From Saccostrea cucullata (lineage: Eukaryota), in assembly GCF_032062105.1 (NCBI RefSeq), contig NW_026934446.1, positions 1 to 60,309 of the forward strand: DNA of 60,309 bases. The letters are read 5' to 3'. The translations under genes and the position numbers were made by a program. Within the stretch, counting starts at the first letter, position 1. The number at the start of each line of letters is the position of its first letter. Positions 4,684-43,909 of the stretch are shown here, in pieces. The notes under the pieces are model-generated. The model worked only from the letters and a program-made list of their open reading frames with translations, did not search any database and was not told where the DNA came from.

Positions 4684-5145
4684 TAGAGCTGGGTATCGCG
4701 GCTGAAAAATCGTATCGCGATATATTGCAATATTATATTTTGTATTGCAATATATCACAATATAATTTTTTTAATAAATTTTGATTTTCATCAATGTTAA
4801 ATGAAAACACAAACTGAAATTACATGTATTCTCGAGTTGATATTGCAAGTTTTTTTGTGGCAAAACTTTAAGAATCAAGTTGAAATATTCAGATTCTGCT
4901 TTAACATGAAGGGCTTTCATGTAACAGTTGTCGTCTTTTCGTCTCTGACAGACATGTCTCTGGTTTCCGATCAAACTTCACGTTGCTTGCCGCCATATTT
5001 TACATTGGAAAGGGCAAATAACTCTTTTTGTAACAATTAATAGCATATCGAACCCGAACCGGTATTTACAAAAAAATACCGCGATACGTATTGTGAAGAA
5101 CGAAATCGGGATACACCGGTTAACCGGTAATATCGCACAGCACTA
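4684..5145. mobile_element. hAT-like non-autonomous DNA transposon (MITE) nested in the PLE
   Basis: 8-bp TSD GAAAGAGG at 4676-4683 and 5146-5153; imperfect TIRs TAGAGCTGGG / TAGTGCTGTG. It splits the PLE peptide CSTKPLS|LLLTKIL. Confidence 0.8.
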
Positions 5146-6820: not shown

Positions 6821-7139
6821 CTAATTGCATAACAGGCACTTATCACATATGAAAATGTTGATTCTCAATTTTTGAAACCTTATATACTATTGCAAATACT
6901 TTGCTGAGTAAATTTGTTCGAACCAAATTGAGTTTATTTAGTAACAAAATAGTTGAGTTATTATCCATCTGTTATAAATCTAATCAGACAAAATTTAAAA
7001 AAAAATGTTTTGAAAATAAGGATGTGATAAAAAAGTGTAATTGAAAATATTTTTTTTTAAATTAAAGGTTGTATTCATTTAATGGCGAAGATAGAGCCCT
7101 GACACTTCAACTATTATACGTAGTGAATCCAGTCAGATC

Positions 7140-7767
7140 ATGTCTTTATCCAAGTGCTACGCCTCTACACAAGAAACAACAAACACTGCTCGACTGGCGA
7201 GACTTATACTGGGTCCATGTACTGATGTGTTACGTGATATTCTAAAGACAGAAGTGAAGCCATCTGATTTGTCCAGAAAGGTTAAAGAATTTACAGATAA
7301 ACTTTCACATGGACAAAGAAATCCACTCAACAAAACACAATCAGAGATAATTTTCCCCAAACACACGAAACAATACAGTAGTGATTACTCAGACTTAGAC
7401 ATATCTTTTTTGTATTTACTTCTACGCAATGTAAGTAAAATATCATCACATTCCAAAGGTTGGGGAGAGATTCCGAATCCCGGAGACAGAAGCGTGGCAG
7501 CCAACATTGAAAGAATTCGCCTCATTAGAAACCAGTATTACGGACATTCAGCTGATTTGTCCCTGTCCGATTCAGAATTTAGACAGGAATGGCGGAACAT
7601 CCGGGACATTGTAATGGAGCTAGAGCGACACCTAGGAACAACCACGATATACCAGGATGCAGTCAACGAGATAAAAACCTGCTCCATGGACCCAGAACAA
7701 GAGAAGAAATACTTAGATTTACTTGGAGATATCAGAGAACTTCATACAACTGTGGATTATTTATCGA
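7140..7767 (+). CDS. Exon encoding the DZIP3-like HEPN domain (copy 1)
   Basis: ORF 7140-7775 with donor GTAAGT at 7768; Rx5H motif RNQYYGH; in-frame stop upstream of the ATG. Confidence 0.85.
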
Positions 7768-9607
7768 GTAAGTAATTATAATCCTTCCTGTTATTTATGG
7801 CTTAATGATTCTTTACTGGGAATATTTTGATGAATTTAGACAGGAATGGCAAAGCATTCAAGATTTTAGACATTACTTATCATAATACTTAATAAACATT
7901 TCATCAGATTGATAATTATCAGATGTTGAAATATAAAAATTAAAAAAAAAAATATCTAACTTTTAATTTATTGTATCTATTCCTATTTCGTAGGTAATAT
8001 GCTGATGATGCGAAGAGAATTGGCGCTTCACGGTAAATATCTCATATAAGTTGCATGTCATGATGATCGTATAAATGAGATGATCAAAATAGGAAATCCA
8101 GTTTGCCACAATGAAAAGTATTACTGATACTACAAAGCACATCAGTAATGCACGATATGTGGGATTTCATGAAATAGCAAAATGCGACAACTATGCTCAG
8201 GTTCTTAGAAAGAGTTTATACATTCCTGTTTCGCAATACATTCTTTAAATAAACAAACTCGCTGACTTCAGTCCATTATAAATTTTCTGATGAATATATC
8301 ATGAAATATAACTTCTTTTACAGATTTATTATTTTTTTGTAGATCCAAGACTTGCAAGAAGGATCGGTACGATAATATTAAGATAAAATAGATATCAAAT
8401 AAATAGCTTGATATTTCATATTTAGATATTCAAGGATGCCTACTGGTAACAAAAGACAACAAAATTTAGTATGTTAATAATGCATGTTTGTTTATTTTAT
8501 GGAAAAATTCCTGGTCTTAAAGGCCTAGATAAGATCCAGTACGCCATTAGAGCCTTAATGGCATAATGAAAGAAATTAATATCCGTGTTCCTTTCATTAA
8601 CATACTTATTGAAAAATGCGGAGGATGTATTTCCTTTTTTAATTTTCTTCATGAATTCGTTGATTTATATATCATTAATCATTTGTGTCAGTTCTGTGAA
8701 ATTTATTATTAGATGATTTTAACACCAGCAAGTGATCACATTTTGTCCAGCGTCTTCCTGTCTGTCCGTCTGTAAGCTTTTCACAATTTCAACAGGTGAA
8801 GGGGATTCAAATTTGTTCAAATGAAGTACCATGCCCAATTACAGGGTGAGACAATTAAGAATTTCTTTAAAAAATGAAATTCTCAAAAATCTTCCTCACA
8901 AGAACCACTCTGTCAGGAAAGATGAAACTCAGGTAGTATAAGTTCAAGTTTATTTAAATCATGACCTTTAGGGGTTAAGTGGGGCCACAATGGACGATCA
9001 CAGATTTGTAAAGGAATTTTTTTTAAAAAAAAAAGCATACTCAGGTGGTGTAGATTCATGAATTGTTCAAATTATGTCCTTGGGGCTAGGGCGGGCCACA
9101 ATGACCAATCAAAGTTTTACATAGATATATAAAGCAAAAAAAAAATCTTTAAAAAACCTTTTTCTTGAGAACAGCAAAGACATAATTCGTCATATTTATA
9201 TGGACGCATCCATGTTATAGTGAAGATTCAAGATTGTTTAAATCATGACTCCCGGGGGTGGGGTGCGGCCAGTATGGACAATCACAATTTTACATAGGAG
9301 TATTCTAAATATGAAAAAATATTCTCAAGAACAAAAAAGATGATTGGTTTTGTTTATATGGAAGCATCCTCGGGTAGTTTAGATGCAGATTTGTTACAAT
9401 CATGACCCACGCATTCTTACCCCCGGTTGGGTGGGACCACAATAAAAGTTCAAACTTATAGGGAAAAGTCACAGTTCGTCAAACAAATATGTAAGCGTTT
9501 TAGTTAGTATGCATTCAAGTTTGCATAGTTTGCTCAAATCAACCCCCTTTTTAGGATCGGGACCACTTAGGCATTTACTAAATCGTTTTTGTCCTAGGCA
9601 CAGTACC

Positions 9608-9639
<32 letters not shown>

Positions 9640-12600
9640 ATACAATATAATTCCTGTAGTCTAAATTGATTAATTATCTTTGAAGCTAAAACACTCTTGA
9701 CTTTAAGCAACAATACAATTTTGCACATACCATTGAGCATATCACCGTTAATTAATAAATAGATAAATTCTGGAATCTTAGAGACATTAAGTCCATGTTC
9801 CTTAAAGATAACTATCATTTCTTTTCAGAAACAACTAAGAAAATGATACAAAAACATTATGAAGCTGTTGGTCATCTATTTGTAAAAACTCATGCGTTTG
9901 AGAGAGCCAAGGAACTGTTGGACAATAACGGTTATGTCGTCATCAAGGGAAACCCCGGGACTGGAAAAACCACAAATGCCAAGATGTTGATGAAAGAATT
10001 GATGGATGAGGGGGAATCTCCTCTTCAGCTTTACAAGTTCAAAGACTTGTACGGTAACATATCACCGGGTGATGGTATAGTGGTATTTATCGACAATTTA
10101 TTTGGAGAGTTTTCTTTATCCAGCGATGAGATTCAAGAATTTAAAGCTAGAAAAGATATGATAAAGGTTTTAATTGAAAGTGACATAGATAATGAATCAA
10201 ACAAATTTATTTTTACACTTAGAAATGATATATATCAAGAATGTGTACAGAACCAGCGCGATGACAATTTTTTGATGTCGTCCTTGGTTGACCTGTCAAG
10301 CAAGGAAAATGCATTGATAAAAGAAGAAATATTACAGTTTTCAGAAAAATATGAGCTTTCTGAATACATAGAAGACAAAGAACTTATTCATAAGGTATAT
10401 GAAATGCCACTAACTATAGGATTTCCACAATGTTGTAAGTTAGCAAGAAGTAATGAAGCTTTTAAACAAAACGTATTTGTATTTGTAAAAAATGCAATGA
10501 TGTTTATGAGCGACTACTTCAAAACATTAATGAAAAAACAAACTGTAAAAACTGCTGTTTTAGCATATGTTCTCCTGAGTGGAGGAAAAGTAGATTTTGA
10601 ATTAATTGACAATCCCCGACTGGATTTAGAGATGAAGCACGCTTCTTTAGAATTTGTAGGTCTACAAAACTCGTATGTTAACGATTTCCAGGACAGTATT
10701 TTTTGTTTTGAGGGATTTTTAATTATACATGACACGATAGAAAACACCTACAGATTTTCCCATAGTTCAGTTCAGGAATCCCTTTTCAGTGTCTTGTTTA
10801 ATTTTGATTCTGAAAAAATTATCCAAATGTGTTATCCGTCCTTACTTCTTACATTGACGACATGTAAAAACCCCAAAAGTACACAAGTCTACATAGAACA
10901 AAGCTTGTTTAAATATGTTGTCCGCCGCGTTGCAAATATAATTGGAAAAAGGTCTGTGATAGGATATTCCTCAATATCATCACTGGATTTATGGAATGAT
11001 TCAAACTTCCATGAGCACGTATTACAATCTGAGGATTGCACATCGAAGTTTAAAACATGCCGTGATACCAACGGTGATTCAATGTTTGTGCATTTTTCGA
11101 AGGTGGGAAATAAGCGATGGGTTGAATATTTACTTCCGAATTCAAAAAAAAGACAAAGATACAGATCACTTAACGCCGCTTGCTCTAAAAATCAACCCGA
11201 CATTGTTAATCTCATTTTGTCAACAGATGTGGAATGTGATCTTCAAACATGTTTTTATGCTGTACAGAGTGGTAATATAGAGTTATTGCTCCGAATTTGT
11301 GAGCTTGTTGATGTTCATCAAATTTCTCATTCCTTACATCCTGTCTGGAGTTGTTTAAGACATAGCTTACTTCAGGAAATCTGTTTTATGCAACACACAC
11401 AATTAATTGAACACGTTCTAGAAAAATTTTCATTCCTTGTAGATATTAAGGACAGCCAGGGCTCTAATGCATTACAAGGTGCAGCAAGTTCTGGGGACAA
11501 ACATGCATTTAATCTTTTGTTAAAGTTTGGCTTTGATCCTTATGAAAAAGATCGAGACAATGGTCACACTGTTCTTACTTGTGCTTGTCAGGATGGAAGG
11601 ACAGACATGGTAAAATATCTTATTGAAACATATCCTGCATTACTCCAGGAACACACAGATGTTCGTGGAAAAAGTCTTCTGCATTGGGCAGCTTTCAGTG
11701 GGAATATAGATATGTTTGAATATATGCTTAACCTCTTTGAGAATGAAAATATATTACATGTACCAAGTGACAATAAACCAAAGGGATATAAAACAGATAA
11801 TTCAGGTCAATCTATCCTGCACGCTGCATGCAAAAATGGGCATTATGATATGTTTGAATATTTATTAAACAGATACCCTCAATTACTGGATGTCTGTGAC
11901 AATGATGGTAAAAATATTCTCCATTACACAGCCCTAGGTGGCAACATAGATCTTTTTAAGTACTTAGTTGAGAATTATCCCCATCTGTTAGACGTCAAAG
12001 ACAAATTTAGTAAGACAGTTTTGCATGACGCAGCCTGGGGAGGCAATGTTCAAATAGTAAAACCGTTGATTGAGAAAAAGATGGACATCAATGCCCTACA
12101 GGGAGATGGTGAAACAATTTTACATCTGTGCTGTCGTTCAGGCAAAATGGAGATGTGTGAGTATTTGGTCAAACATTTCTCGGATTTATTGGCAATCAGG
12201 GACAATAGAGGATGGACAGTGTTACATTCAGCTTGTAATGGAGGAAGTGTTGAAATTATTTCTTTTCTTATAGAAAAAGGGATGGATTTCAATGCCTTGT
12301 CGAAAGATGGTAAAACTATCTTGCATATAGCATGTCTCAATGGGAAGTTTGAAGTTTGTGAATACTTAGTTGAGAATTATCCCCATCTGTTAGACGTCAA
12401 TGACAAATCTAGTGAGACAGTGTTGCATGATGCAGCCCGGGAAGGCAATGTTCAAATAGTAAAACTATTGATTGAGAAAAAGATGGACATCAATGCGGTA
12501 CAGGGAGGTGGTGAAACAATTTTACATCAGTGTTGTCGTTCTGGTAAAATGGAGATGTGTGAGTATTTGGTCAATCATTTTCCAGATTTATTGGAGATAA

Positions 12601-14900
12601 GGGACAATGACGGATGGACAGTGTTACATTCAGCTTGCTATGGTGGAAGTGTTGAAATTGTTTCTTTTCTTATAGAAAAAGGGATGGATTTTAATGCCAT
12701 GTCAAATGATACTAAGAGTATCCTACATAGAGCCTGTATCAATGGGAAGTTTGAAATTTGTGAGTACTTAGTTGAGAATTATCCCCATCTATTAGATGTC
12801 AAAGACAAATCTAGTGAGACAGTGTTGCATGATGCAGCCTGGGGAGGCAATGTTCAAATAGTAAAACTATTGATTGAGAAAAAGATGGACATCTATTCTG
12901 TACAGGGAGACGGTGAAACAATTTTACATCAATGCTCTCGTTCTGGTAAAATGGAGATGTGTGAATATTTGGTCAATCATATTCCAGATTTATTGGAGAT
13001 AAGGGACAATGACGGATGGACAGCGTTACAATCAGCTTGCAGGGGAGGGAGTGTTGAAATTGTTTTTTTTCTCATAGAAAAAGGGATGGACATTAATATC
13101 TTGTCAAATAATGGTAGAAGTATCCTGCATATAGCTTGTCTCAATGGGAAATTTGAAGTTTGTGAGTACTTAGTTGAGAATTATCCCCATCTGTTAGACG
13201 TCAAGGACAAATTTAGTGAGACAGTGTTGCATGATGCAGCCTGGGGAGGCAATGTTCAAATAGTAAAACTGTTGATTGAGAAAAAGATGGACATCAATGC
13301 CCTACAGGGAGATGGTGAAACAATTTTACATCAATGCTGTCGTTCTGGTAAAATGGAGATGTGTGAATATTTGGTCAATCATTTTCCAGATTTATTGGAG
13401 ATAAGAGACAATGACGGGTGGACAGCGTTACATTCAGCTTGTAAGGTAGGAAGTGTTGAAATTGTTTCTTTTCTTATAGAAAAAGGAATGGACATTAATA
13501 TCTTGTCAAATAATGGTAGAAGTATCCTGCATTTAGCTGGTTTCAATGGGAAATTTGAAGTTTGTGAGTACTTAGTTGAGAATTATCCCAACCTATTAGA
13601 CCTCAGAGACAAATCCAGTAACACAGTGTTGCATGATGCGGCCTGGGGAGGGAATGTTCAAATAGTAAAACTATTGATTGAGAAAAAGATGGACATCAAT
13701 GCCCTACAGGGAGATGGTGAAACAATTTTACATCAATGCTGTCGTTCTGGTAAAATGGAGATGTGTGAGTATTTGGTCAATCATTTTCCAGATTTATTGG
13801 AGATAAGGGACAATGACGGATGGACAGTGTTACATTCAGCTTGCTATGGTGGATGTGTTGAAATTGTTTCTTTTCTTATAAAAAAAGGAATGGATTTTAA
13901 TGCCATGTCAAATGATAGTAAGAGTATCCTACATAGAGCCTGTATCAATGGGAAGTTTGAAATTTGTGAGTACTTAGTTGTGAATTATCCCCATCTGTTA
14001 GATGTCAAGGACAAATATAGAAATACAGTGTTGCATGATGCAGCCTGGGGAGGCAATGTTCAAATAGTAAAACTATTGATTGAGAAAAAGATGGACATCA
14101 ATGCCCTACAGCGAGGTGGTGAAACAATTTTACATCAGTGCTGTCGATCTGGTAAAATGGAGATGTGTGAATATTTGGTCAATCATTTTCCAGAATTTTT
14201 GGAGATAAAGGACACTGAGGGGTGGACAGTGTTACATTCAGCTTGCAGTGGAGGAAGTGTAGAAATTGTGTCTTTTCTACTTGATAAAGGATTAGATACC
14301 AATGCTTTGTCAAATGATGGTCAAAGTATTCTTCATAGAGCTTGTCTCAAAGGGAAATTTGAAATTTGTGGGTACTTAGTGAAGAATCATCCCCATCTAT
14401 TAAATATTAGGGACAATTCTAGTAACTCAGTGTTGCATGATGCAGCACGGGGAGGCAATGTTCAAATAGTAGAATTATTAATTGAGAAAAAAATGAACAT
14501 CTTTTCCCGACAGGAAGACGGTGAAACAATTTTACATCAATGTTGTCGCTCTGGTAAAATAGAGATGTGTGAGTATCTGGTCAATCAGTTTTCTGAGTTA
14601 ATAAAGATCAGGGACAATAGAGGATGGACAGTGTTACATTCAGCTTGCAGTGGTGGAAGTTTAGATATAGTTTCTTTTCTATTGAAAAAAGGATTGGAAA
14701 TCAATGTTTTGTCAAATGTTGGTGAAAGTATATTGCATATTGCTGGTCTAAATGGTAAACATGATGTTTGTAGGTTTTTATCAACAAATCACTTAGAATT
14801 GTTAGCAGTAAAAGATAATCAAGGTAAATCAGTGATAGATACTGCCGCTGAACAAGGTGACATAGACCTAATTCATATTTTCGGAGAACGCCGCTTTTAG
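7140..14900 (+). CDS. NLR-like protein: DZIP3-type HEPN domain - nSTAND3-type NTPase - ankyrin repeats (copy 1, 1920 aa); join(7140..7767,7994..8032,8343..8366,9829..14900)
   Basis: All introns are GT..AG and phase 1, and the spliced length is 5763 nt in one open frame. HEPN-like motifs DLDISFLYLLLRN, GWG and ERIRLIRNQYYGH; Walker A GNPGTGKT; Walker B VVFIDNLFG; more than 30 TxLH.A..G ankyrin repeats. Micro-exons are conserved in copy 2. Confidence 0.88.
8720..9639 (+). mobile_element. Helentron/HINE-like non-autonomous element with internal satellite-like repeats (intron 3, copy 1)
   Basis: GTCTGTCCGTCTGT microsatellite-like 5' part, repeated AAATCATGAC..GGGGCCACAATG units, 3' end CAGGTGAGCGATGTGGCCCATGGGCCTCTTGT with a short palindrome. 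Confidence 0.7.
9829..14900 (+). CDS. Large terminal exon: STAND NTPase plus ankyrin array (copy 1)
   Basis: Acceptor ttttcAG at 9827-9828; uninterrupted ORF to TAG at 14900. Confidence 0.92.
11961..14774 (+). repeat. Seven tandem 402-bp (134-aa, four-ankyrin) coding super-repeats
   Basis: Anchor TACTTAGT recurs at 11961, 12363, 12765, 13167, 13569, 13971 and 14373 (period 402). Confidence 0.95.
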
Positions 14901-17742
14901 GAACCTTCTTAATTCTTCAGCAATTATGTATTTTCACGAAAGAAATGCTGAGAAAATTTAATGAAGAAACTCTTTCATAAAATAAAAAGGGTTAAAATTG
15001 ATAACACTTACATTAAAATGTGATTTACCCCTTGTATTCATGCAGGAAAAAGAAGAAATTAATATATTTTGAAATAGACGAAGATAGTGAACACTGATCA
15101 AATCCTTTATACAAAAAAAAAATTGAGAACATTTCACAAACAAAAATATCTGAAATCTTCAACGGTTAGACGAGATGTCTGGCTAGATGAGAAGTTTGAA
15201 ATATTGACAATTTGTATGTATCTTTATTTTTACACTCTAGAAATTCTGGAAAATTTTTAATGCTCAGTGTATTAATTTAGATCCAAAGAGTCTTATTAGA
15301 TTTTTTTTACATAGTTTCATTTTTAGATAGATCAACATTTATTATCTTTACCTTTTAATATATTACTTTGTTTTACGTCCAACAAAGATCTTTTTTATAC
15401 AAATATGGGATTCAAATTGTAAAATGTACGCAGGTTCTTCAAATGATTCAGTACCAAATCTGTCATCATTATGCTTTTTAAGAGAATTCAAAACCATAGG
15501 AGACTTGAAAAATGTTATGAAAATAAAGTGCTCCCGCTTAAAAAAAGGTGTCTTGTAACCAATGATTTCAAAATTATGTGTGATAATCATATTCTTGCAA
15601 ATAGTCTTTCATTTATTATGCCGTACAGTTTTTGAATGCTATTAACTAAGATTTTATTTGTTTATGTAAATAAGATAGTTAAAATAAACCGAATTGACAT
15701 TTATAGTTCAAATGATATGTTAAAATCATTTAGAGCTAAATTATCGTTGTATATTCGAAAACTTCATTTATAAGAATGTGAAGAGTGTATAACTTCCTTT
15801 ATAATTTTATTTCGTTAGTATTTGAAGTGATATAAGCATGATAGGGATTTAGTTATCTAGTTTATTTCTTATCAATTCATCGTCTTATTATATGTTTTAT
15901 TTCATTGTTGTGTCGCAATTTATTTCTTTGTGAAATGATGAAATTTTCATCAAAGGAATGGAAAAATTTGTTGATTTTGCATATAAGTTGATTAAATTGT
16001 TTCTTTGAACGATTGAATGTGCAGCTTATACATCTTTTTATGTTTAATTTTGAGTATCGTCTGAATATTACAATTGATTGTATGTCATATTTTGCCTTTA
16101 TATATGAACTATATGCGCGGGAAATTGAATTTATACATAGAACTTTACCATTTACAACAGAAAATTATATATTGTAGTTAGAAGTTGTAGATTTTACTGA
16201 CAGACTACAGACTTACAGAGAGAGAAAAACTTTGATCAATAGTCCGCATGAAAGATATATGTACGTCACCATTCCCACCCACTATTTGTGAAAACTTTAA
16301 AAATAAAAAAAATACTTTAATTGACGTTTATGTCTTCAAAAATTCATACAATGTTATGGATATGGCACTTAAAATGTTCTTATTTCATTTTCATGAAGGA
16401 TAAAAGCAACGAATATACATTATATACAAATAAATTAATTTTGGGCAATTGGGGGAAGGGTAAAAATTCGCAGGTACTTTAGTCATGGTTTATAATGATA
16501 TCTGTACCGTTATCGATACCTAAAAAGGCTGCCCCCTTTTTTTCCCCAGCAATACTTTTACTATCGGAAATGTTCAGTGAAAGGCAGGTTGCGCCCCCCC
16601 TTAATACTACAAGAAATTCATATCAGGGAAATGTAGTGTCGAATACCTAGAATTAGGTTCTGAATGAAATTGGTATAGGAGGAAGACTTTTTTAGAGAGG
16701 AAAAAGCTGAAATGTCTTTATGAAGCACACAAAAAATTAATAGCTATAATAAATTGTATTTGAACAATACCTTATTCGTAAGTTTTCTATCTTATTGAAC
16801 GCAATTAAGTTGATTACAAACTGTACGTCGGGTTCGTAGCCACGATGATCTCAGTACGGAAAATACAGTTTTTATCGATTAACTCAACAGAATAAGATAT
16901 ATGTACACTGCATATCTATTTTAGTCTTTCGATGTATTTTGATTTTTCATTTACTCGTCCTCAACTTATGATACCTATCTGTCGCCTTGTCATGAATTTA
17001 AATTGGATACACATACTAGCTAACGATTAACTGCCATGTACCAATTGTCTACTTATGTAATCCTTTTATCAATAAATTTTAGTGTTTTTCCCTGCAACAA
17101 TATGTTTCTGATAAATTCCAAGCATATTTTGCTTGTTTTAAAAACTATTGTTTTATTGTATTCTAATTAAATAACATAATTTGTTGTAAAACTATTTAAT
17201 CAATTAACCCGTTAAATACAATATTTATAATTAGTTCTTGATTAAAACAATATAGCAAAAGGGACTCGACGTTCTAGAAGCGTCCGTCAATATTGAGATC
17301 GGTGATTGACGAAAATAATTTACACTTTTCGCTTTTTAATTGGTTACCAAGATTTATTAAATCAAGTTTTGATTGATTAATTCAGTGATGACATTTTATG
17401 AAATAAATAAAAGATTGTTTGTTGTCAGTTTCATTAAAATTTGACAGTAGCTAAGATCCGCCAACCGGAAATGCCACAATTCTCACGTTGTGCTCTTTCA
17501 TGGCTATTTTCAGAAAATTGAAGTAGTAATTTTATGAACGATACTTACTATCCGAGTGAAATCTGAATATAGTTTATGGACATCATTTTGTATGTAGTGT
17601 AGTATTAGAGGGTAAGTAAGAACTCTTGTACACCCGTTTCGGAGTTTATTTGCAAAATTTATTAATTTATAAGTATAGATATGGAAAAGAACTGTGAATG
17701 TTCTCCCGCCTACCTCTAGGGAAATTTTTAAAAGTTAACATA

Positions 17743-18650
17743 CAATGGGTTATCAAAAAGTTCGTGGACTAAGGCTATAAAATTAGTACTTTATAGACTG
17801 TGCTTTCTAAATTTATATAGAACAGAAAACAACAAAAAATTAAGAAATTTTGAAAAATTTAGCCTGATACGTTCATTAATTGCCAAATTATTATAAAATG
17901 AAAAGGACATTATATGATCACCCGGCGCTGTCGCCGTTTATTTTCATGACATCCGATAACTTCATTGTTTTTTTTTTCAAAATCCGCTTATTCTACCTCA
18001 TGAACATTTTTGATGAGATTCCCTTGAGCTGAGTAAGGATAAAACCCGCCTTGTTTATATGATTTTACAATGCCATGAACAGTGGCCTTCAATGAGTGTA
18101 TACCCTTTCTCTCTGAATCTATTTCAACATAAAAAGAACAGTACTCTGGATGCATATTATTTCTCTCTAGCCAGTTTCAACATGTTTTAGGTCTATACCA
18201 GTTTTTCAGGGGCAAAACTTTATAGAATGTTGAAAACGGAAACCACGCCACCCCCCCCCCTTTTAACGTCATTTTCAAGGCCTCATTTGTTTGGACTTTC
18301 CGTGTAAAATTTACGATAAAATTTCATAGAAATTCCAGAATGAAATGAAAATTTCAAATTTTATAGAACAATTGTGTCCCAACACATAACTGAATTATCG
18401 GAAATTTCGGATGTCAAATGACCATCTCACAGGAGTTTCTCTCAGTTACACAGGTCGTTTTCGAGGTTGCACTGAATGGATATACCATTGTTTACAAAAC
18501 ATCACTGATTTATAAAAAATAAAATTCATGATTTATAGTTTATTCTTTAGATAGAAAAGATGATGCTAACGAGATATCTTAAAATTCATTGATGTACCTA
18601 AAGCAGTTTTAATTTATGACACTACTCCACGAACGTTTTGATATCCCTCG
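17743..18650. mobile_element. mariner-like non-autonomous element
   Basis: TA-flanked imperfect TIRs CAATGGGTTATCAAAAAGTTCGTGGA / TCCACGAACGTTTTGATATCCCTCG; absent at the paralogous site near 43390. Confidence 0.7.
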
Positions 18651-19111
18651 TATACCAATGATTTTAAATATTTATATCGATATTTTTATGAATTCTCATA
18701 AAAAATCAATTATTTAGGAGAGCAAAGAGAGTTAAATCCATGATTTTGGTAAATCTTGCGTTTTCAACCGTAATAGACTGCCATTTTTCAAACTCGTGCT
18801 GATGTATATTGTGTTTCAGGTGAAGGATGGGGCATTGGAGGTATAATTTTATAGACAAAAAACGAAAAAGAATTTTGTTATCAATTTAAAAGCGAATTAC
18901 AATTAAAACATTATACTTTATTAATATTTATGAGTTTAATTTAGAAGAGAAGATATAAGGAACATTTTATGTCATTAAAGACTATTATAGAAATATTACA
19001 TGTAGTTGAGTTTAAATTTGAAAATTTTCACCCCACGAAAACCATTGTAAACGGAGGCGTATTACATTTATACTGAATGTTTTATACAAATACAGATAAG
19101 AGATAACAATG

Positions 19112-19415
19112 ATTTTAATAAACGAGACTCTTGATTCTCTTGTTTCATCAATTTGTTTGTCAATAATTTACCTCGTTTTAGAAATTAGAAATTGCTCATA
19201 CATAGAGCATGTCCTTGCATATCGAATAAGCTGTGATATATACACTCCGTATGCAGGTGATAAAGGTATATTGCAGTATTAGTAAGGGAAGTTGACGATT
19301 GTAATGTTAAAGTTATCACATTTATCATAAAGTTCGGTTGTTAGATTACCATTAACGTTTTTTTTTTCAAGTAAAATATGTAGATAGGAAACAGATGTGT
19401 CAGATTCTGAGGTAT
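19112..19415 (-). mobile_element. Degraded PLE (Naiad-type) RT/thumb fragment
   Basis: Matches the PLE at 225-390 plus 3890-4025 (e.g. CCGTATGCAGGTGA, AGTAAGGGAAGTTGACGAT). Confidence 0.8.
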
Positions 19416-19854
19416 CTCTTTTTAGGCCCATGGTATCACATTGCACATCTCCAGAGAACCACTGCCATTATGAGAAACGAATTTTTAACCCCCTTAACTT
19501 TGCTTGAGACTTGCAAATCGGATTGATTAAAAATGCACAACTTATGAAAAACAGGATTCAATGCTGTTAGTCCCTTCAATATATCGCTTTAAAGAAAATA
19601 TAACTCAATTTTTTAATACAAATCTCAAAATTCTAGTTTAACGAAATCAAAACATCCTCGACACTTTGATTTTGCCAGACACTTTATATAATCTAAGAAC
19701 TATAAATGCATCTCAGATTTGTAGAGGTGAATTAATACTTCTTCAAAATTGCTTCAATTTATAATTTGATGTTTTAATTTGATGTTTTTGTTGCATGTTA
19801 AATATCAAAATCTAGAAAAACATCTGAAAGACGTGAAATATTGAATAATTTTTC

Positions 19855-21570: not shown

Positions 21571-21795
21571 TAAACTTGTTAATAATTTTGCAAATTTTTG
21601 CTTTTTTCAGTGACAGGGTTAAGTACATTTCTGTTTTCAAACAATATATGTTTTTTTTTATATAAAGGATATCGATATCCATAAAACTATACAAAAAGGA
21701 GTAAAGCAAACAGGCATCTCCGAAACATCAGAGGTGGGATAAGTCATTAACATTATAGGCGACTGTATGTCAGATTTCCAGCCTACCTACATTAG

Positions 21796-35986: not shown

Positions 35987-36614
35987 ATGTCTTTATCCAA
36001 GTGTTACATATCAACACCAGAAACAACAAACACTGCTCGACTGGCGAGGCTTATACTGGGTCCATGTACTGATGTGTTACGTGACATTCTAAAGACTGAA
36101 GTAAAACCCTCTGATTTGTCCAGAAAAGTTAAAGAATTTACAGATAAACTTCTACATGGACAAAGAAATCCACTCAACAAAACACAATCAGAGATCATTT
36201 TCCCCAAACCAACAAATCAATACAGTGGTGATTATTCAGACTTAGACATATCTCTATTATATTTACTTCTACGCAATATAAGTAAAATATCACAACATTC
36301 CAAAGGTTGGGGAGAAATACCTAATCCCGGAGACAGAAGCGTTTCCGCCAACATTGAAAGAATTCGCCTTCTAAGGAACCAGTATTACGGTCATTCAGCT
36401 GATCTGTCCCTATCCGATTCAGAATTTAGACAGGAATGGCGAAACATCCGGGACATTGTAGTGGAGCTAGAGCGACACCTAGGAACCAATACGGTTTACC
36501 AGGATGCAGTCAACGCAATAAAAACCTGCTTTATGGACCCAGAACAAGAGAAGAAATACATAGACTTACTTGGAGATATCAGAGAACTTCATACATCTGT
36601 GGATGATCTTTCGA
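35987..36614 (+). CDS. Exon encoding the DZIP3-like HEPN domain (copy 2)
   Basis: Open frame closely similar to 7140-7767; donor GTAAGT at 36615. Confidence 0.8.
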
Positions 36615-37574
36615 GTAAGTAATTATAAGCCTTCATGTCATTTCTGGCTTAATGATTCTTGCATCATTTTACTCGGAATATTTTAATGGATTTAGACAGG
36701 GCTAGGGAAATATCCAAGATTTTAGACATAACTTATAATAATTCTTAATAAATATATCAACAGATTGATCATTATCAGATGTTCAAATATGTAAAATATT
36801 TTAAAAATCTAACTATAGATTAATTTTATCTATTCCTGTTTTTAGGTAATGTGCTGATTATGCAAAGAGAATTGGTGCTTCATGGTAAAAATCTCATATA
36901 AGTATAATGATGATCGTATAAATGATGATTAATACAGGAAATTCAGTTTGCCACAGTGTTAATTTTTAAACAATGAATAGTTTTATTGATACTACAAAGC
37001 AGATAGGTGATGCACGATAAATAGGATTTCATGAAATGAAAAAATGCGACAATTATGCTTAAGTTTTTAAAAAGATATAAAGCATTCCCATCTCTCAATA
37101 CATCCTTTAATCAAACAAACTCACTGTCTTCAGTCCGTTATAAATTTTCGGATGAATTTATTTTGAAAAATAACTTCTATTAAAAATTTTTTTTTTGTAG
37201 ATCCAAGAGTTGCAAGAAAGATCGGTACGATAATATTAAGATAAAATAGATATTAAATAAATAGTTGGATATTTCATATTTAGATATTCAAGGATGCCTA
37301 CTGGTAACAAGAGACAACAGAATTTAGTATGTTAATAATGCATGTTTGTTTATGTTATGGAAAAATTCCTGGTCTTAAAGGCCTAGATAAGATTCCTTAC
37401 GAAATTAGAACCTTAATGGCATAATGAAAGAAATTAATATCTGTGTTCCTTTCATTAACATACACATTGAAAAGTGTGGAGGATTTATTTTCTTAAATTT
37501 TTTTTATGAATTTGTTGATTTATATATCATTGATGATTTGTGTGAGTTCTGTGAAATTTATTATTAGATGATTG

Positions 37575-38498: not shown

Positions 38499-41118
38499 TA
38501 TACAATATTAATCCTGTAGTCCAAAATGATTAATTATCTTTGACGCTCAAACACCCTTGAGTTCAAGCAACAATACAATTATTCATGTTTCATTGAGCAT
38601 ATCGCCGTTAATTGATAAGTAAACAAATTCTTAAATCTTAGAGACATTAAGTCCATGTTCCTTAAAGATAACTATCATTTCTTTTCAGAATCAACTAAGA
38701 AAATGATACAAAAACATTATGAAGCTATTAGTCATCTATTCGTAAAAACCCGTGCGTTTGACAGAGCGAAGGAACTGTTGGACAGTAACGGGTATATCGT
38801 CATCAAGGGCAACCCTGGAACTGGAAAAACCACGATCGCCAAGATGTTGATGAAAGAATTGATGGATGATGGAAAATCTCCTCTAAAGCTTTACAAGTTA
38901 ACAGACTTGTATGAAAACATATCACCGGGTGATGGTATAGTGGTATTTATTGACAATTTATTTGGTGAGTTTTCTTTGTCCAGCGATGACGTTCAGGAAT
39001 TCAAAGCTAGATCAGATATGATAAAGGTTTTAATTGAAAGTGACACTGATAATAAATCTAACAGATTGATATTTGCTTTAAGAAATGATATATATCAATG
39101 CTTACAAAACGAGTGCAATGACGATTTTTTTATGTCATCCTTGGTTGACCTATCAGGCAAAGAAAATGCATTGCTCAAGGAGGAGATCCTGCAGCTATCA
39201 GAAAAATATGGGCTCTCTGAATACATAGAAGACAAAGAACTTATTCATAAGGTATATGAAATGCCACTAGCTATAGGGTTTCCACAATGTTGTAAATTAA
39301 CAAAAAGCAATGGAGAATTTAAACGAAACGTAATTGCATTTTTACAAAATGCAATGATGTTTATGAGAGAACCACTTCAAAACATTATTGAAAAAACGAA
39401 CTGTAAAATCTGCTGTTTTAGTTTATCTTCTTCTGAATGGAGGAAAAGTAGAGTTCGAATTAATTGAAAATCCCCGAATGGATTTAGAGATGAAGCGCGA
39501 CTCTTTAGAATTTGTAGGGCTACATAGCTCGTATCTTAACGATTTCCAGGACAGTATTTTTTGTTTTGAGGGTTTTTTAATAACTCGTGACAAGATAGAA
39601 AATGCATACAAATTTTCCCATAGTTCAGTACAGGAGTGTCTCTTTAGTGTTTTGTTTAATTTTGATCCAATAAAAATGATCCAAATGTGTCATCCGTCCC
39701 TACTTCTTACATTGACGACATGTACAAACCCCAAAAGTACACAAGTCCTCATAGAACAACGATTGTTTAAATATGTTGCCCGCCGCATTGCAAATATAAT
39801 TAGAGAAAGGTCTGTAATTGGATATTCCTCCATATCATCACTGGAATTATGGAATGATTCAAACTTCCATGAGCACGTATTACTATCTGAAGAATGCACT
39901 TTGAAGTTTAAAACTTGCCGTGATACCAACGGTGACTCAATGATTGTTCACTTTTCGAAGGTGGGAAATAAGCGGTGGGTTGAATATTTACTTCCGAATT
40001 CAGAAAAAAGACAAAGATACAGATCAATTAACGCTGCTTGCTCAAAAAATCAACCAAATATTGTTAATCTCATTTTGTCATCTGATGTGGAATGTGATCT
40101 TCAAACATGTTTTTATGCTGTACAAAGTGGCAATATAGAGTTATTGCTCCGAGTTTGTGAGTTTGTTGATCTTCATCAAATTTCCCATTCCTTACATCCT
40201 ACCTGGAGTCATATAAGACATAGCTTACTGAAGGAAATATGTTTTATGCAACAAACACAATTAATTGAACAAGTTCTAGCAAAATATCCATTCCTTGTAG
40301 ATATAATGGACTGCCAGGGCTCCAACTCTTTACAGTCTGCAGCAAGTTCTGGAGACAAACATGCATTTAATCTTCTGTTAAAGTTTGGCTTTGATCCATA
40401 TGAAAAAGATCGAGACAATGGTCACACGGTTCTTACTTGTGCTTGTCAGAAAGGAAGAACAGATATGGTGAAATACCTTGTTGATAAATATCCTGCATTA
40501 CTCCAGGAACACACAGATATTCATGGAAAAAGTCTTTTGCATTGGGCAGCTTTCAGTGGAAACATAGATATGTTTGAATACATACTAGACATCTTTGAGA
40601 ATGAAAATATATTACATTTATCAAGAGCAGTTAAACCACAAGTAGATGGAAAAGATAATTCAGGTGAATCTATCCTGCACTTTGCATGCGAAAATGGACA
40701 TTATGATATGTGTAAATATCTGTTGAGAAGATACCCACAATTACTGGATGTCTGTGACAATGATGGGGCAAATGTCCTCCACTCCGCAGCTGTAGGAGGC
40801 AACGTAGATCTTTTTAAGTTTCTCTCAAGTAAAGGATTAAATGTTAACTGTACAACAAATACTGGGAAGACTGTGTTACACATGAGTTGTAATGGGGGTA
40901 GAGAGGAAATGTGTAGGTATCTTGTGAATATGTATCCAAGTTTAATATCGATTACAGATAATAACAGATGGACAGTGTTACATTCAGCTTGCTTTGGTGG
41001 AAGTGTAGAAATTGTGTCTTTTCTTATAGAAAAAGAAATGGACATTAATACCTTGTCAAATGATGGTAAAACTATTCTGCATATAGCTTGTCTCAATGGG
41101 AAACATGAAATTTGTGAG

Positions 41119-41922
41119 TACTTAGTTGAGAATTATTCCCATCTATTAGACGTCAGGGACAAATCTAGTAATACAGCATTGCATGCTGCAGCCTGGGGAG
41201 GCAATGTTCAAATAGTAAAACTATTGATTGAGAAAAAGATGGACATCTATTCTGTACAGAAAGGTGGTGAAACAATTTTACATCAATGCTGTCGTTTTGG
41301 TAAAATGGAGATGTGTGAACATTTGGTCGATAATTTTCCAGATTTATTGGCGATAAGGGACACTGAGGGGTGGACAGTGTTACATTCAGCTTGCTGTGGT
41401 GGAAGTGTAGAAATTGTTTCTTTTCTTATAGAAAAAGGAATGGACATTAATATCTTGTCAAATGATGGTAGAAGTATCCTGCATATAGCTTGTCTCAATG
41501 GGAAGTTTGAAGTTTGTGAGTATTTAATTGAGAATTATCCCAATCTGTCAGACGTCAGGGATAAATCTAGTAACTCAGTGTTGCATGATGCAGCCTGGGG
41601 AGGCAATGTTCAAATAGTAAAACTATTGATTGAGAAAAAGATGGACATCAATGTCATACAGGAAGAGGGTGAAACAGTTTTACATCAATGCTGCCGCTCT
41701 GGTAAAATAGAGATGTGTGAGTATCTGGTCAACCATTTTCCAGATTTATTAGAGATAAGGGACAATGACGGATGGACAGTGTTACATTCAGCTTGCAGTG
41801 GTGGAAGTGTAGATATAATTTCTTTTCTATTAAAAAAAGGATTGGACATCAATGTTTTGTCAAATGTTGGTGAAAGTATATTGCATATTGCTTGCCTAAA
41901 TGGTAAACATGATGTTTGTGGG
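41119..41922 (+). repeat. Two 402-bp ankyrin super-repeats (copy 2)
   Basis: YL(V/I)ENY anchors at 41119 and 41521. Confidence 0.9.
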
Positions 41923-43909
41923 TTTTTATCAACAAATCACCAAGACTTGTTAGCAGCCTGGGGAGGCAATGTTCAAATAGTAAAAGATAATTGAGGTAAA
42001 TCAGTGATAAACAATTTTATTGCGTCTGGTAAACAATGTGTGACATAGACCATTTTGATTTATATTTTGAGAGAACAGTGTTACCAGCTATTAGGAACCT
42101 TCTTAAATCCTCATCAATTCTGACAAATCTAGTATTTTCATTTTATGCTTAGTTGTTGTCAAAGATATCTGCAGTGTTGCTTGTTAAAATAGTAAAACTA
42201 TTGATTGAGAAACATTCATATAGTGAAACAAAAGTCTTCCCTAAAATGTGATAGATAAAAACGTTTAGATTACTTACACTTACATTGAAATGTGATTTTC
42301 CCCTAGCATCCATGCATGAAAAGAAAGAAGAAAATCATAGACGAAGATAGCGAACAGTGATTTACCTTAGAATCCATTATACATATAAAATAGAGAACAT
42401 TTCAGGAACAAAAATACCCGAAATATCCAAAGGTAAGATCAAATGTCTAGGTAAATGAACAGTTTCAAATATTAAAAATTTTTATGTAGTTTTATCTTTA
42501 CACTCAAGGAACGCTTGCATTTTTTTTCATGCAAAACTGTACTACTTTAGATCCAAAGAGCCTTATTAGATTTTTTTACGAAGTTTCATTTGATCAACGT
42601 TTATTATCTTTACCTTTTCATATATTACTCTGTTTTATGTACAACATAGATCTTTATTATGCAAATATGTATGGGACTAGAATTGTAAAATGTTCGCATG
42701 TTCCTCAAATGATTCAGTACCAGATCTGTCATCAGTATGCTTTTTAAGAGAATTCAAAATTATGGAGACTTGAAAAATGTTATGAAAATAATGTACCCCC
42801 GTTTTAAAAAAAAAAGATATATTGTAATCAATAATTAAAAATGATCTTTTAAAATCATATTCCTGCAAATATTCTTTAATTTATTATGCCGTACAGTTTT
42901 CGAATGCTATTAACTAAGATTTCATTTGTTTATATAAACAAGAAAGTTAAAATAAATCGATTTGACATTTATAGCTCTAAAGATATGTCAAAATCATTTA
43001 GACCTAAATTATTGTTGTATATTCAAATACTTTATTTAGAAGATTGAATATGAAGAGTGTGCAAGTTCTTATATAATTTTATTTCGTTATTAATTGAAGT
43101 AAAATATGCATGAAAGGGATTTAGTTTATGCTTTATGAATTAATTGCCTTATATGTATTTATTCATAGTTGTGTTGCAATTGTTTTGCATCTATATATAT
43201 GGTTTTAATTTTTTCTCAAGATATTCTTTGAACGATTGTTTGTGTAGTTTATTAATGTTTTTAATGTTTAATTTTTGGTATCGTTGAATATTTTTATTGA
43301 TTTCGTGTCGTATTTTGCCTTTATATAAATATGTGAAAGAACTGTGAATGTTCTCCCGCCTACCTCCAGGGAAATTTTCAAAAGTTAATATTTATATCGA
43401 TATTTTTTTATGGATTTTCATTGAAAACATCACTCATTTATGAAAACAAAGAGAGATAATTGCATGGTTTTGGTAAAACTTGCGTTTTCACTTTAGAAGT
43501 CAATGGAAAACGCGATAAAAAAATAACCCCTAGGAAACAAAAAACCCTTTATTCAGGTTATATAGACTGCCATTTCACAAACTCATGCTGAAATGCATTG
43601 TGTTTCACGGAGAGGGATGGGGCATTAGGGGCATAAGTTTATAGACAAAAAAGGACAACAATTTTTTTGTTTTCAATTTAAAAACGATTTACAGTTAAAA
43701 CATTATACTTTATTAATAATTGGTATTTATGTGTTTTATTTAGAATAGAATATATAAGGAAAAGTTTATCTCATTAAAGACTTTAATATAAATATAACAT
43801 GTAGTTGAGTGTAAAATTGAAAAATTTCACCCCAAGAAAACCATTGTAAACCGATCGCAAGGCGCATTACATGTATACTGAATGTTTTAAACAAATATAT
43901 ATAACAGTG

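What the first reader, a model, noticed from the sequence alone, without database searches (positions are those of the whole stretch)
11961..14774. Homogenised 402-bp ankyrin super-repeats with variation concentrated at predicted binding positions
Seven 134-aa units are highly similar at the DNA level, yet specific sites vary: the residue after (H/Q)SAC is N,Y,R,K,Y,S,S (F,C,S in copy 2); LH[I,R,I,L,R,R,I]A; AA[W/R]; beta-turn tips DKFSK, DKSSE, DKSSN, DKYRN, DNSSN and DNRG, DNDG, DTEG. These correspond to the beta-turn and helix-1 positions that form the ankyrin binding face. This resembles the high-internal-conservation, hypervariable repeats of fungal NLRs and suggests a recombination-diversified sensor.
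Basis: partly seen in the sequence, partly recalled or inferred. Interest (0 to 1): 0.8.

Follow-up and report, generated by a model that had tools for sequence, protein, structure and literature searches.

The report
Oyster immune-type receptor's variable ankyrin array
This is the ankyrin "sensor" end of an oyster gene built like an innate-immune receptor (RNA-cutting domain, ATP-driven switch, ankyrin repeats); its seven near-identical 134-residue blocks really do differ mainly at the ankyrin binding surface, as in fungal immune receptors, but proof of selection for diversity is only partial.

Summary
Observation confirmed. Window 11961-14774 holds seven in-frame 402-bp units (4 ankyrin repeats each; 79-94.5% nt identity, no indels). 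They lie inside an intact 1701-codon exon of a Saccostrea cucullata gene: DZIP3-type HEPN exon, nSTAND3 NTPase, about 34 ankyrin repeats.

Amino-acid variation is concentrated at the canonical binding positions (2, 3, 5, 13, 14, 33): 20/24 codons vary against 44/110 elsewhere (p=2e-4). Synonymous change is evenly spread.

Interpretation partly supported.
- The array meets the fungal "high internal conservation" criterion at the 134-aa period (0.88).
- At least 25 paralogous arrays in this genome carry 2-15 units, and there are signs of exchange within and between loci.
- "Homogenised" is overstated. Mean unit identity (86%) is no higher than the identity between paralogs outside the repeats (87-89%), and terminal units group by position.
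- Across 115 units, dN/dS is 0.78 at binding positions and 0.37 elsewhere. Only 2-7 loop or helix-end codons exceed 1, depending on the test.
- Allelic variation could not be tested.

The architecture is known in bivalves, and such receptors were recently reported in animals. This scan had already noted the family on other DNA of this genome. I class it as a new member of a known kind.

The parts
7140..7767 (+). Exon 1: DZIP3/hRUL138-like HEPN domain (predicted RNase effector)
   Evidence: Pfam PF18738, E=3.5e-31, 108 bits against a cut-off of 27. The Rx4-6H motif is present as R-N-Q-Y-Y-G-H. The donor is A|GTAAGT at 7767/7768. The phase matches paralog protein P0002, which joins ...DYLSS to NML....
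7994..8032 (+). Exon 2 (39 nt), encoding (S)NMLMMRRELALH
   Evidence: Read from the sequence. It matches the N-terminus of NCBI model P0001 and the linker of P0002. It is flanked by an AG acceptor and a GTAAAT donor.
8343..8366 (+). Exon 3 (24 nt), encoding (D)PRLARRI(E)
   Evidence: Read from the sequence. It matches P0001 and P0002. The phases close, and the four exons sum to 5760 nt, or 1920 codons.
9829..14900 (+). Exon 4: nSTAND3 P-loop NTPase, helical arm, about 34 ankyrin repeats, and the stop codon
   Evidence: The open frame 9795-14900 is 1701 codons. Pfam PF20720 nSTAND3 scores E=5e-29 at aa 29-180. Walker A is GNPGTGKT and Walker B is VVFID. Ank_2 scores E=5e-234. The acceptor is ttcttttcag|AA at 9828/9829.
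11961..14774 (+). Seven 402-bp (134-aa) super-repeats, each made of four ankyrin repeats (33+34+33+34 aa): the finding itself
   Evidence: TRF period 402, 7.0 copies, 0 indels. Units are in frame. An AlphaFold model of units 2-3 has pLDDT 95.6 and an ankyrin helix pattern. Foldseek matches Espin-1, DARPin and ankyrin-B repeats with probability 1.00.
35987..36622 (+). HEPN exon of the tandem paralog (copy 2)
   Evidence: Pfam PF18738, E=4.5e-32. It is part of the segmental duplication 7078-25740 ~ 35922-59261.
38655..41994 (+). Main exon of copy 2: nSTAND3 plus ankyrin repeats, with a 1-bp insertion near 39369 that breaks the frame and only about 2.4 super-repeats (40957-41928)
   Evidence: Two overlapping ORFs, 38655-39467 and 39388-41994. 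The alignment to copy 1 shows one extra base. TRF reports 40960-41928, period 402, 2.4 copies.

Best explanation
The 2.8-kb array is the C-terminal sensor domain of a four-exon oyster (Saccostrea cucullata) gene that encodes a tripartite, NLR-like protein of about 1920 residues. The parts are a DZIP3-type HEPN RNase domain, an nSTAND3 P-loop NTPase switch, and about 34 ankyrin repeats. The gene belongs to a very large lineage-specific family. Within one subfamily the ankyrin domain is built from a 4-ankyrin, 402-bp module. This module has been duplicated, deleted and exchanged, within arrays and between paralogous loci, by unequal crossing-over or gene conversion, giving arrays of 2 to 15 modules. 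The fold-forming residues are under purifying selection. The residues of the loop tips and the end of helix 1, which form the canonical ankyrin binding groove, evolve about four times faster at the amino-acid level, with no excess of synonymous change. A handful of them (A33, B2, C3; under a looser test also A13, A32, C13) change faster than synonymous sites. That is the signature expected of a ligand-binding surface being diversified. The following is inferred, not shown. Ligand binding or release of autoinhibition by the ankyrin solenoid would license NTP-dependent oligomerisation of the nSTAND3 module. This would bring HEPN domains together, and their composite Rx4-6H site would then cut RNA, producing an antiviral or cell-suicide response.
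For: Architecture: Pfam finds HEPN_DZIP3, nSTAND3 and Ank. The exon phases are identical to paralog P0002, which carries all three domains. The HEPN and Walker motifs are intact. Family: the own-genome search gave at least 75 scored matches from 1403 first-look candidates, with open frames of 490-3242 aa, and 675 nSTAND3 candidates. At least 205 matches to the 402-bp unit lie on about 25 loci. Array dynamics: arrays hold 2-15 units. The nearest neighbour of a unit lies in the same array for 30 of 94 units, against 5.8 expected. Units 2/5 and 3/4 are younger than the paralog split. Unit 7 is 96.3% identical to C12424's last unit, against 87% in the N-terminal part (binomial p=2e-10). C2903 and C1515 are 96.6% identical up to a breakpoint inside the array and 85% after it. 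Selection: in the window's array, 20/24 binding codons vary against 44/110 others, and synonymous change is even. Across 115 units, parsimony dN/dS is 0.78 against 0.37. The median non-synonymous rate is 0.8 against 0.2 (Mann-Whitney p=8e-8), and the median synonymous rate is 0.8 in both classes. The M2a-like against M1a-like LRT is 126.7, with 3.7% of sites at omega 2.7. Null simulations with omega at or below 1, with or without recombination, gave LRT of at most 9.7 and no such sites. With a site-specific synonymous rate, B2 (p=2e-5) and A33 (p=2e-4) survive Bonferroni correction; A31, D32, C3 and A32 reach p<0.05. Five of the six strongest sites are DARPin positions (hypergeometric p=7e-4). 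Independent arrays with a 67-aa period in P0009 and P0010 show the same enrichment (p=0.049 and 0.014). Fold: pLDDT 95.6 with ankyrin solenoid matches.
Against: As a class, the binding positions have dN/dS below 1: 0.78 by tree counting and 0.77 in 19 independent nearest-neighbour pairs. This fits relaxed constraint as well as it fits diversifying selection. Three of the five sites flagged under a constant synonymous rate (A13, A32, C13) also have high site-specific synonymous estimates and lose significance in the FEL-like test. Trees built separately for each partition weaken the signal. My codon analysis uses a fixed FastTree topology, a parameter grid, and a unit set that includes some units from frame-broken paralogs. 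No ligand, expression or RNase activity is known for this family. The NCBI model omits the HEPN exon, and no RNA evidence could be obtained. Two haplotig pairs of other family members show no difference in unit number and only scattered substitutions.
Confidence: 0.65

Rival explanations
1. Relaxed constraint only. The array is an ordinary ankyrin solenoid that grew by tandem duplication. Its surface positions vary simply because they are the least constrained in any ankyrin repeat. There is no selection for diversity, and the domain acts as a scaffold or autoinhibitory lid rather than a diversified sensor.
For: Class-level dN/dS at binding positions is 0.77-0.78, below 1. The DARPin positions were originally chosen because they vary in natural ankyrin repeats (my own knowledge). 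C13, A13 and A32 lose significance once the synonymous rate is allowed to vary by site. Within-array identity is no higher than between-paralog identity.
Against: B2 and A33 keep dN above dS after multiple-test correction with a site-specific synonymous rate. The M2a-like LRT of 126.7 compares with at most 9.7 in null simulations. The selected sites sit together in the loop between repeats A and B and on repeat C rather than being spread over all surface positions. The family context, a huge lineage-specific expansion with a HEPN effector, is that of conflict genes.
Confidence: 0.27
2. Decaying or non-functional copy. The gene is a dead member of a bloated family, and the pattern is neutral drift after duplication.
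For: Several paralogs, including the tandem copy 2, carry frame breaks. The NCBI model lacks the HEPN exon. No expression data were obtainable.
Against: The 1701-codon exon is open, and all four exons are in phase with consensus splice sites. Overall omega is 0.43, and 54 of 134 codons are under significant purifying selection. The Walker A, Walker B and HEPN motifs are intact.
Confidence: 0.04
3. Housekeeping ankyrin protein, as the database name implies ('serine/threonine-protein phosphatase 6 regulatory ankyrin repeat subunit B-like').
For: This is the name NCBI gives the protein. The repeats have strong sequence similarity to ankyrin-1/2 and other generic ankyrin proteins.
Against: The protein has an nSTAND3 NTPase module and an in-phase HEPN exon, which PP6 regulatory subunits lack. 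It belongs to a family of hundreds of loci with variable arrays. The name is an automatic transfer based on the ankyrin repeats.
Confidence: 0.01

Closest known systems
Fungal NLRs with highly internally conserved (HIC) repeats, e.g. [quoted passage not shown] 2014, PMC4986451; Ament-Velasquez & Saupe 2026, PMC13449251
   Same: A STAND NTPase is followed by a superstructure-forming repeat array whose units are highly alike. Unit number is variable, and units are shuffled within and between family members. Hypervariable or positively selected sites lie on the concave ankyrin face, in the inner helix and the beta-hairpin/loop. The 2026 paper states that HIC NLR-like proteins, counting nSTAND3 among the ATPases, also occur in animals.
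   Different: The NTPase here is nSTAND3, not NACHT or NB-ARC, and the effector is a HEPN RNase. The conserved unit is a 4-ankyrin, 134-aa module; single ankyrin repeats within it are only 44-55% alike. Homogenisation is weaker, with partial positional orthology. Allelic repeat-number polymorphism, a hallmark in Podospora, was not shown here.
DZIP3/hRUL138-like HEPN lineage-specific expansions in bivalves and cnidarians (Anantharaman et al. 2013, PMC3710099; Takeuchi et al. 2022, PMC9646362; Emery et al. 2021, PMC8260672)
   Same: An N-terminal DZIP3-type HEPN domain with an Rx4-6H motif is fused to a STAND NTPase and to repeats, including ankyrin. There are large expansions in oysters, copy-number variation between haplotypes, and a proposed antiviral RNase role.
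   Different: Those papers describe mainly HEPN-NACHT proteins and gene-level copy number. None of the passages I read analyses ankyrin super-repeats, their internal conservation or site-wise selection.
Bacterial Avs5 (Sir2 - nSTAND3 - TPR/Sel1/PPR), an anti-jumbo-phage STAND defence (bioRxiv 10.1101/2025.07.08.663546)
   Same: It has the same NTPase family (PF20720) and the same tripartite logic of effector, switch and helical-repeat sensor, with variable sensor repeats proposed to set specificity.
   Different: It is prokaryotic, with a Sir2 effector and TPR-type repeats. PADLOC models give only weak hits to the oyster protein.
RNase L (ankyrin repeats - pseudokinase - KEN/HEPN RNase)
   Same: An ankyrin-repeat sensor is coupled to a HEPN-superfamily RNase that is activated by ligand-driven dimerisation. 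The KEN family is listed with ankyrin fusions; the mechanism is from my own knowledge.
   Different: It has no STAND NTPase. The RNase sits at the C-terminus and the ankyrin repeats at the N-terminus. It is a single conserved gene with nine non-homogenised repeats.
Designed ankyrin repeat proteins (DARPins)
   Same: The positions that vary between the oyster units are the ones randomised to make DARPin binders (2, 3, 5, 13, 14, 33). DARPins are among the best sequence and fold matches.
   Different: DARPins are engineered 33-aa consensus repeats. The oyster array alternates 33- and 34-aa repeats, and the 34-aa type has an extra short helix in the loop.

Membership tests
Ankyrin repeat (Pfam clan Ank) | Significant match to the Ank profiles and a helix-turn-helix-loop solenoid fold | tested here: met
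   Ank_2 E=5e-234 and Ank E=3e-175. phmmer to ankyrin-1 gives E=3e-88. The AlphaFold model has pLDDT 95.6 with paired helices every 33-34 residues. Foldseek probability is 1.00 to Espin-1, DARPin and AnkB repeats, with TM up to 0.82.
nSTAND3 NTPase (PF20720) | Score above the curated cut-off, with Walker A and Walker B motifs | tested here: met
   101.4 bits against a cut-off of 27.2, at aa 29-180. Walker A is GNPGTGKT and Walker B is VVFID.
DZIP3/hRUL138-like HEPN (PF18738) | Score above the cut-off and the Rx4-6H catalytic motif | tested here: met
   108.4 bits against a cut-off of 27 for 7140-7772. The motif is RNQYYGH, with the usual Asn after Arg.
DZIP3/hRUL138-like HEPN (PF18738) | The HEPN exon is part of the same transcript as the NTPase-ankyrin exon | tested here: inconclusive
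   The splice sites and phases fit and mirror paralog model P0002. However, NCBI model P0001 omits the exon, and no RNA reads could be obtained.
HIC NLR-like receptors (Dyrka 2014; Ament-Velasquez & Saupe 2026) | STAND NTPase followed by superstructure-forming repeats | tested here: met
   nSTAND3 followed by about 34 ankyrin repeats in one exon.
HIC NLR-like receptors (Dyrka 2014; Ament-Velasquez & Saupe 2026) | High internal conservation of repeat units (similarity to consensus at least 0.85, or at least 0.70 in the 2026 survey) over at least 100 aa | tested here: met
   Mean identity to the consensus is 0.877 over 7 x 134 aa. This holds at the 134-aa period only; neighbouring single ankyrin repeats are 44-55% identical. 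I computed identity to consensus myself and did not run T-REKS.
HIC NLR-like receptors (Dyrka 2014; Ament-Velasquez & Saupe 2026) | Repeat-number polymorphism between alleles | not testable with these tools
The window's locus has no second haplotig. Two haplotig pairs of other members have equal unit numbers. Among paralogs the number ranges from 2 to 15.
HIC NLR-like receptors (Dyrka 2014; Ament-Velasquez & Saupe 2026) | Concerted evolution: exchange of units within and between family members | tested here: inconclusive
   For: the nearest neighbour lies in the same array for 30 of 94 units against 5.8 expected; there are young pairs 2/5 and 3/4; and there is an inter-locus patch of 96.3% identity. 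Against: mean within-array identity is 0.824 against 0.802 between arrays, and terminal units cluster by position.
HIC NLR-like receptors (Dyrka 2014; Ament-Velasquez & Saupe 2026) | Positive diversifying selection at positions of the binding surface | tested here: inconclusive
   Two codons (A33, B2) pass Bonferroni correction with a site-specific synonymous rate. Five pass with a constant synonymous rate, and the LRT is 126.7 against at most 9.7 in null simulations. The class-wide dN/dS is 0.78, and the analysis does not model recombination.
PP6 regulatory ankyrin repeat subunit (ANKRD28/44/52), the database name | An all-ankyrin protein without other enzymatic modules; a conserved single-copy orthologue | tested here: not met
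   The protein carries nSTAND3 and an in-phase HEPN exon, and it is one of hundreds of paralogs.

The most novel reading that the evidence does not exclude
Bivalves run an animal counterpart of the fungal HIC-NLR system. A germline repertoire of HEPN-nSTAND3 receptors would have ankyrin sensors continuously re-assorted from a shared pool of 402-bp four-ankyrin cassettes, by unequal crossing-over and inter-locus gene conversion. Under this reading, individuals differ in cassette number and order, and the loop and helix-end residues are under diversifying selection for recognition of viruses, transmissible cancer cells or other non-self.
Probability: 0.3. Interest if true: 0.75.

Novelty: new member of a known kind. 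Interest (0 to 1): 0.5.

Why it matters
Oysters lack adaptive immunity, yet they survive dense viral and bacterial exposure. How their huge families of intracellular receptor-like genes generate specificity is not known. This locus gives a concrete and tractable example. It has a defined 4-ankyrin cassette, a short list of candidate specificity residues (positions 13, 32, 33, 2 and 3 of particular repeats), and evidence that cassettes move within and between genes. If this is confirmed in populations, the cassette-shuffling mode of receptor diversification described in fungi would extend to an animal. It would also be linked to an RNase effector. The family would then be a natural target for work on oyster herpesvirus resistance.

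Tried and rejected
Steps that failed or were blocked:
There is therefore no evidence on expression, splicing, depth or alleles.
- Allele against paralog test for C2903 and C1515. From sequence already held, I could show only a 96.6% to 85% identity breakpoint inside the array.
- PADLOC. It gave only weak hits (PDC-S73 at 2.8e-10 on the P-loop region, and none for HEPN), so this route gave no link to a named bacterial defence system.

Readings I tested and dropped:
- Whole-class positive selection. I tested it by tree counting and by 19 independent nearest-neighbour pairs. I rejected it because omega is 0.77-0.78.
- Strong homogenisation. I rejected it because within-array identity is no higher than identity between paralogs.
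- Assembly artefact. I rejected it because the units differ by 5-21%, there are no indels, and the frame stays open for 5.1 kb.
- Haplotig pairs as a stand-in for alleles. The pairs L048/L049 and L032/L053 have equal unit numbers and few, scattered differences, so they are uninformative about diversification.

The exons were searched separately.

Full report
WHAT IS THERE

The window is a contig of the hooded oyster Saccostrea cucullata. The protein encoded at 9795-14900 is identical to an NCBI protein of that species, named 'serine/threonine-protein phosphatase 6 regulatory ankyrin repeat subunit B-like'. The assembly is 1.17 Gb in 23,869 contigs.

Tandem Repeats Finder reports one array at 11959-14759: period 402, 7.0 copies, 88% matches, no indels. 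The array lies inside a single open frame of 1701 codons at 9795-14900. The seven units are in frame from 11961. They are 79-94.5% identical in DNA and 68-92% in protein. Mean identity to their consensus is 0.877 for amino acids and 0.92 for nucleotides.

Each unit is four ankyrin repeats of 33, 34, 33 and 34 residues, here called A to D. A resembles C (55% identity) and B resembles D (44%), so the unit is an old doubling of a two-ankyrin, 67-aa module.

THE GENE

Pfam places an nSTAND3 P-loop NTPase at residues 29-180 of the open frame (101 bits against a cut-off of 27) and ankyrin repeats from about residue 553 to the end (Ank_2 E=5e-234). Walker A (GNPGTGKT) and Walker B (VVFID) are intact.

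An upstream open frame at 7140-7775 is a DZIP3/hRUL138-like HEPN domain (108 bits) with the catalytic motif R-N-Q-Y-Y-G-H.

I compared the sequence with the paralog protein P0002, which carries HEPN, nSTAND3 and ankyrin repeats, and with the N-terminus of NCBI model P0001. This gives a four-exon gene:
- exon 1: 7140-7767
- exon 2: 7994-8032
- exon 3: 8343-8366
- exon 4: 9829-14900

The splice sites are consensus, and the phases close to 1920 codons. The NCBI model starts in exon 2 and omits the HEPN exon.

An AlphaFold model of units 2-3 has pLDDT 95.6. It shows helix 1 at repeat positions 7-14, helix 2 at positions 17-25, and an extra short helix in the loop of the 34-residue repeats. Its best structural matches are Espin-1, DARPin and ankyrin-B repeats.

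The whole gene and about 10 kb downstream are tandemly duplicated: 7078-25740 matches 35922-59261 at 80-91%. The second copy has a one-base insertion near 39369 and only about 2.4 units.

THE FAMILY

A search of the oyster's own genome with the non-repeat part gave 75 scored matches out of 1403 first-look candidates. Open frames ranged from about 490 to 3242 residues. The nSTAND3 profile alone gave 675 candidates.

The 402-bp unit has at least 205 matches on about 25 loci. After fetching 26 of these loci, nhmmer showed arrays of about 2 to 15 units. Several members are frame-broken.

Other Saccostrea and Mytilus nSTAND3-ankyrin proteins have their own highly conserved arrays, with periods of 33, 67, 134 or 268 residues and up to 95-99% identity. 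The phenomenon is therefore family-wide and has arisen repeatedly.

IS THE ARRAY HOMOGENISED?

Only in part.

For homogenisation or exchange:
- Units 2 and 5 (94.5%) and units 3 and 4 (93.8%) are more alike than this gene is to any paralog outside the repeats (87-89%).
- Repeats A and B are 92-93% alike among units 1-6, while C and D are about 84% alike and fall into two types. The units are therefore mosaics.
- The nearest neighbour of a unit lies in the same array in 30 of 94 cases, against 5.8 expected.
- Unit 7 is 96.3% identical to the last unit of a gene on contig C12424 whose N-terminal part is 87% identical (binomial p=2e-10). This points to inter-locus conversion.
- Two members on C2903 and C1515 are 96.6% identical for 4.4 kb up to a point inside the array and 85% beyond it.

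Against strong homogenisation:
- Mean identity within this array (86%) is no higher than the identity between paralogs.
- The all-array means are 0.824 within arrays and 0.802 between arrays.
- Last units of different genes cluster together by position.

IS VARIATION CONCENTRATED AT BINDING POSITIONS?

Yes. I fixed the register from the T-x-L-H motif. I used the six positions randomised in designed ankyrin binders (2, 3, 5, 13, 14, 33; Binz et al. 2003, from my own knowledge).

In the window's seven units:
- 20 of 24 binding codons vary, against 44 of 110 others (Fisher p=1.9e-4).
- There are 33 against 54 amino-acid changes.
- Synonymous changes are equal, at 0.50 against 0.45 per codon.

Across 115 gap-free, stop-free units from 26 arrays:
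- The median non-synonymous rate is 0.8 at binding positions against 0.2 elsewhere (p=8e-8).
- The median synonymous rate is 0.8 in both classes.
- The mean non-synonymous rate by repeat position peaks at 13, 32, 3, 33 and 5.

Two independent 67-aa arrays, in P0009 and P0010, show the same enrichment.

IS IT DIVERSIFYING SELECTION?

This is the weak point. These positions are the least constrained in any ankyrin repeat, so concentration alone proves nothing.

As a class, the binding positions have dN/dS of 0.78 by parsimony on the tree (0.37 elsewhere). In 19 independent nearest-neighbour pairs the value is 0.77 (0.39 elsewhere). Within the window's own array the crude values are about 0.65 and 0.28. 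The pair of units 2 and 5 has 8 non-synonymous to 1 synonymous change at binding codons, against 5 to 8 elsewhere.

I wrote a codon-likelihood analysis (GY94, F3x4, fixed FastTree topology, grid over synonymous and non-synonymous rates). The results were:
- One-ratio model: omega = 0.43.
- A model with a class above 1 beats the nearly-neutral model by LRT 126.7. It puts 3.7% of sites at omega 2.7, namely A32, C13, C3, A33 and A13.
- With a site-specific synonymous rate: B2 (p=2e-5) and A33 (p=2e-4) pass Bonferroni correction. A31, D32, D14, C3 and A32 reach p<0.05. C13 and A13 do not, because their synonymous estimates are also high.
- With a separate tree for each quarter of the unit: A13, C13, A32 and C3 keep rates of 1.8-3.3 times the synonymous mean.
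- Eight null simulations with omega at or below 1, half of them with four recombinant partitions: LRT at most 9.7 and no site at the Bonferroni level.
- Five of the six strongest sites are DARPin positions (p=7e-4). All eight lie in the loop or helix-1-end zone.

I conclude that a few codons, chiefly the A-to-B loop (A31-B2) and C3, probably evolve under diversifying selection. The rest of the binding face is merely relaxed. Recombination and synonymous-rate variation remain uncontrolled risks.

ALLELES

The window's locus has no second haplotig.

Two apparent haplotig pairs of other family members (99.76% and 99.56% identical) have equal unit numbers and few, scattered differences.

HOW IT PROBABLY WORKS

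The three-part build, the intact motifs, the fold and the array dynamics are shown. The rest is inferred by analogy with STAND/NLR proteins and HEPN RNases (Leipe et al. 2004, from my own knowledge; Anantharaman et al. 2013, PMC3710099). It also draws on the experimentally studied bacterial Avs5, which uses the same NTPase family.

The inferred sequence is as follows. The ankyrin solenoid binds a ligand, or releases the NTPase. NTP-dependent oligomerisation follows. The HEPN domains then pair and cut RNA.

WHAT IS KNOWN

- DZIP3-type HEPN fusions to ankyrin, NACHT and other modules, with expansions in the oyster, were listed in 2013.
- Pearl-oyster haplotypes differ greatly in HEPN and NACHT gene content.
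- Cnidarians have large HEPN-NACHT sets.
- Highly internally conserved ankyrin, TPR and WD repeats, with repeat-number polymorphism and positive selection on the concave face, define a class of fungal NLRs.
- A 2026 survey that counted nSTAND3 among the ATPases concluded that such receptors also occur in animals, plants and bacteria.
- Two earlier follow-ups in this scan described the same oyster HEPN-STAND-ankyrin family on other pieces of this genome, and a first-stage note covers this same gene.
- I found no paper that analyses the 402-bp cassette or site-wise selection in a bivalve.

VERDICT

This is a new, well-documented member of a known kind, of moderate interest.

Noticed in passing
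window 516-4758 (- strand): LINE-like retroelement just upstream of the gene. It has a 986-aa ORF with reverse transcriptase (RVT_1, E=1.8e-33) and endonuclease/exonuclease/phosphatase domains, plus a zf-RVT ORF. Related fragments lie at 29.2-30.2 kb and 34.3-35.5 kb.
   Followed up: partly
window 7078-25740 and 35922-59261: Tandem segmental duplication of the whole receptor gene plus downstream DNA. The blocks are colinear at 80-91% identity, and copy 2 has extra insertions (about 44.1-51.8 kb).
   Followed up: partly
window 38655-41994: The tandem paralog has one extra base near 39369 relative to copy 1, which breaks the frame. It has an odd C-terminal end and only about 2.4 super-repeats. 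It is probably a pseudogene, unless this is an assembly error.
   Followed up: partly
window 7140-7767: The NCBI gene model (1707 aa) starts in the 39-nt exon 2. It leaves out the in-phase HEPN exon that paralog models include, so the public annotation probably under-calls the effector domain.
   Followed up: partly
window 52856-53518; 21796-22034 and 55446-55905: A 61-bp satellite with 10.9 copies at 98% identity. Separately, a 34-bp tandem repeat is present in both copies of the segmental duplication.
   Followed up: no
L033 (G000:C2903:18900-24600) and L039 (G000:C1515:6500-10900): Two family members are 96.6% identical over 4.4 kb, including upstream DNA, up to a point in the third array unit. 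Beyond that point they are only 85% identical, and their unit counts differ. This indicates a recombination breakpoint inside the array. Whether they are alleles or paralogs is unresolved.
   Followed up: partly
L035 (G000:C12424:11300-20500): A 13-unit array whose units 1-8 form one clade at 93-97.5% identity, the most strongly homogenised array seen. The gene's frame is broken between the NTPase part (644 aa) and the array (1911 aa).
   Followed up: partly
proteins P0009, P0010, P0015, P0032: Other Saccostrea and Mytilus nSTAND3-ankyrin proteins have independent highly conserved arrays with periods of 33, 67, 134 or 268 residues, up to 95-99% identity. The Mytilus protein also carries a CARD domain.
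   Followed up: partly
window 12363-13166 (model m764a11edbbc4): In the 34-residue repeats (B and D), the loop after helix 2 is predicted to form an extra short helix (model residues 74-78, 141-145 and 208-212) instead of the usual hairpin. The solenoid therefore alternates two repeat types.
   Followed up: no
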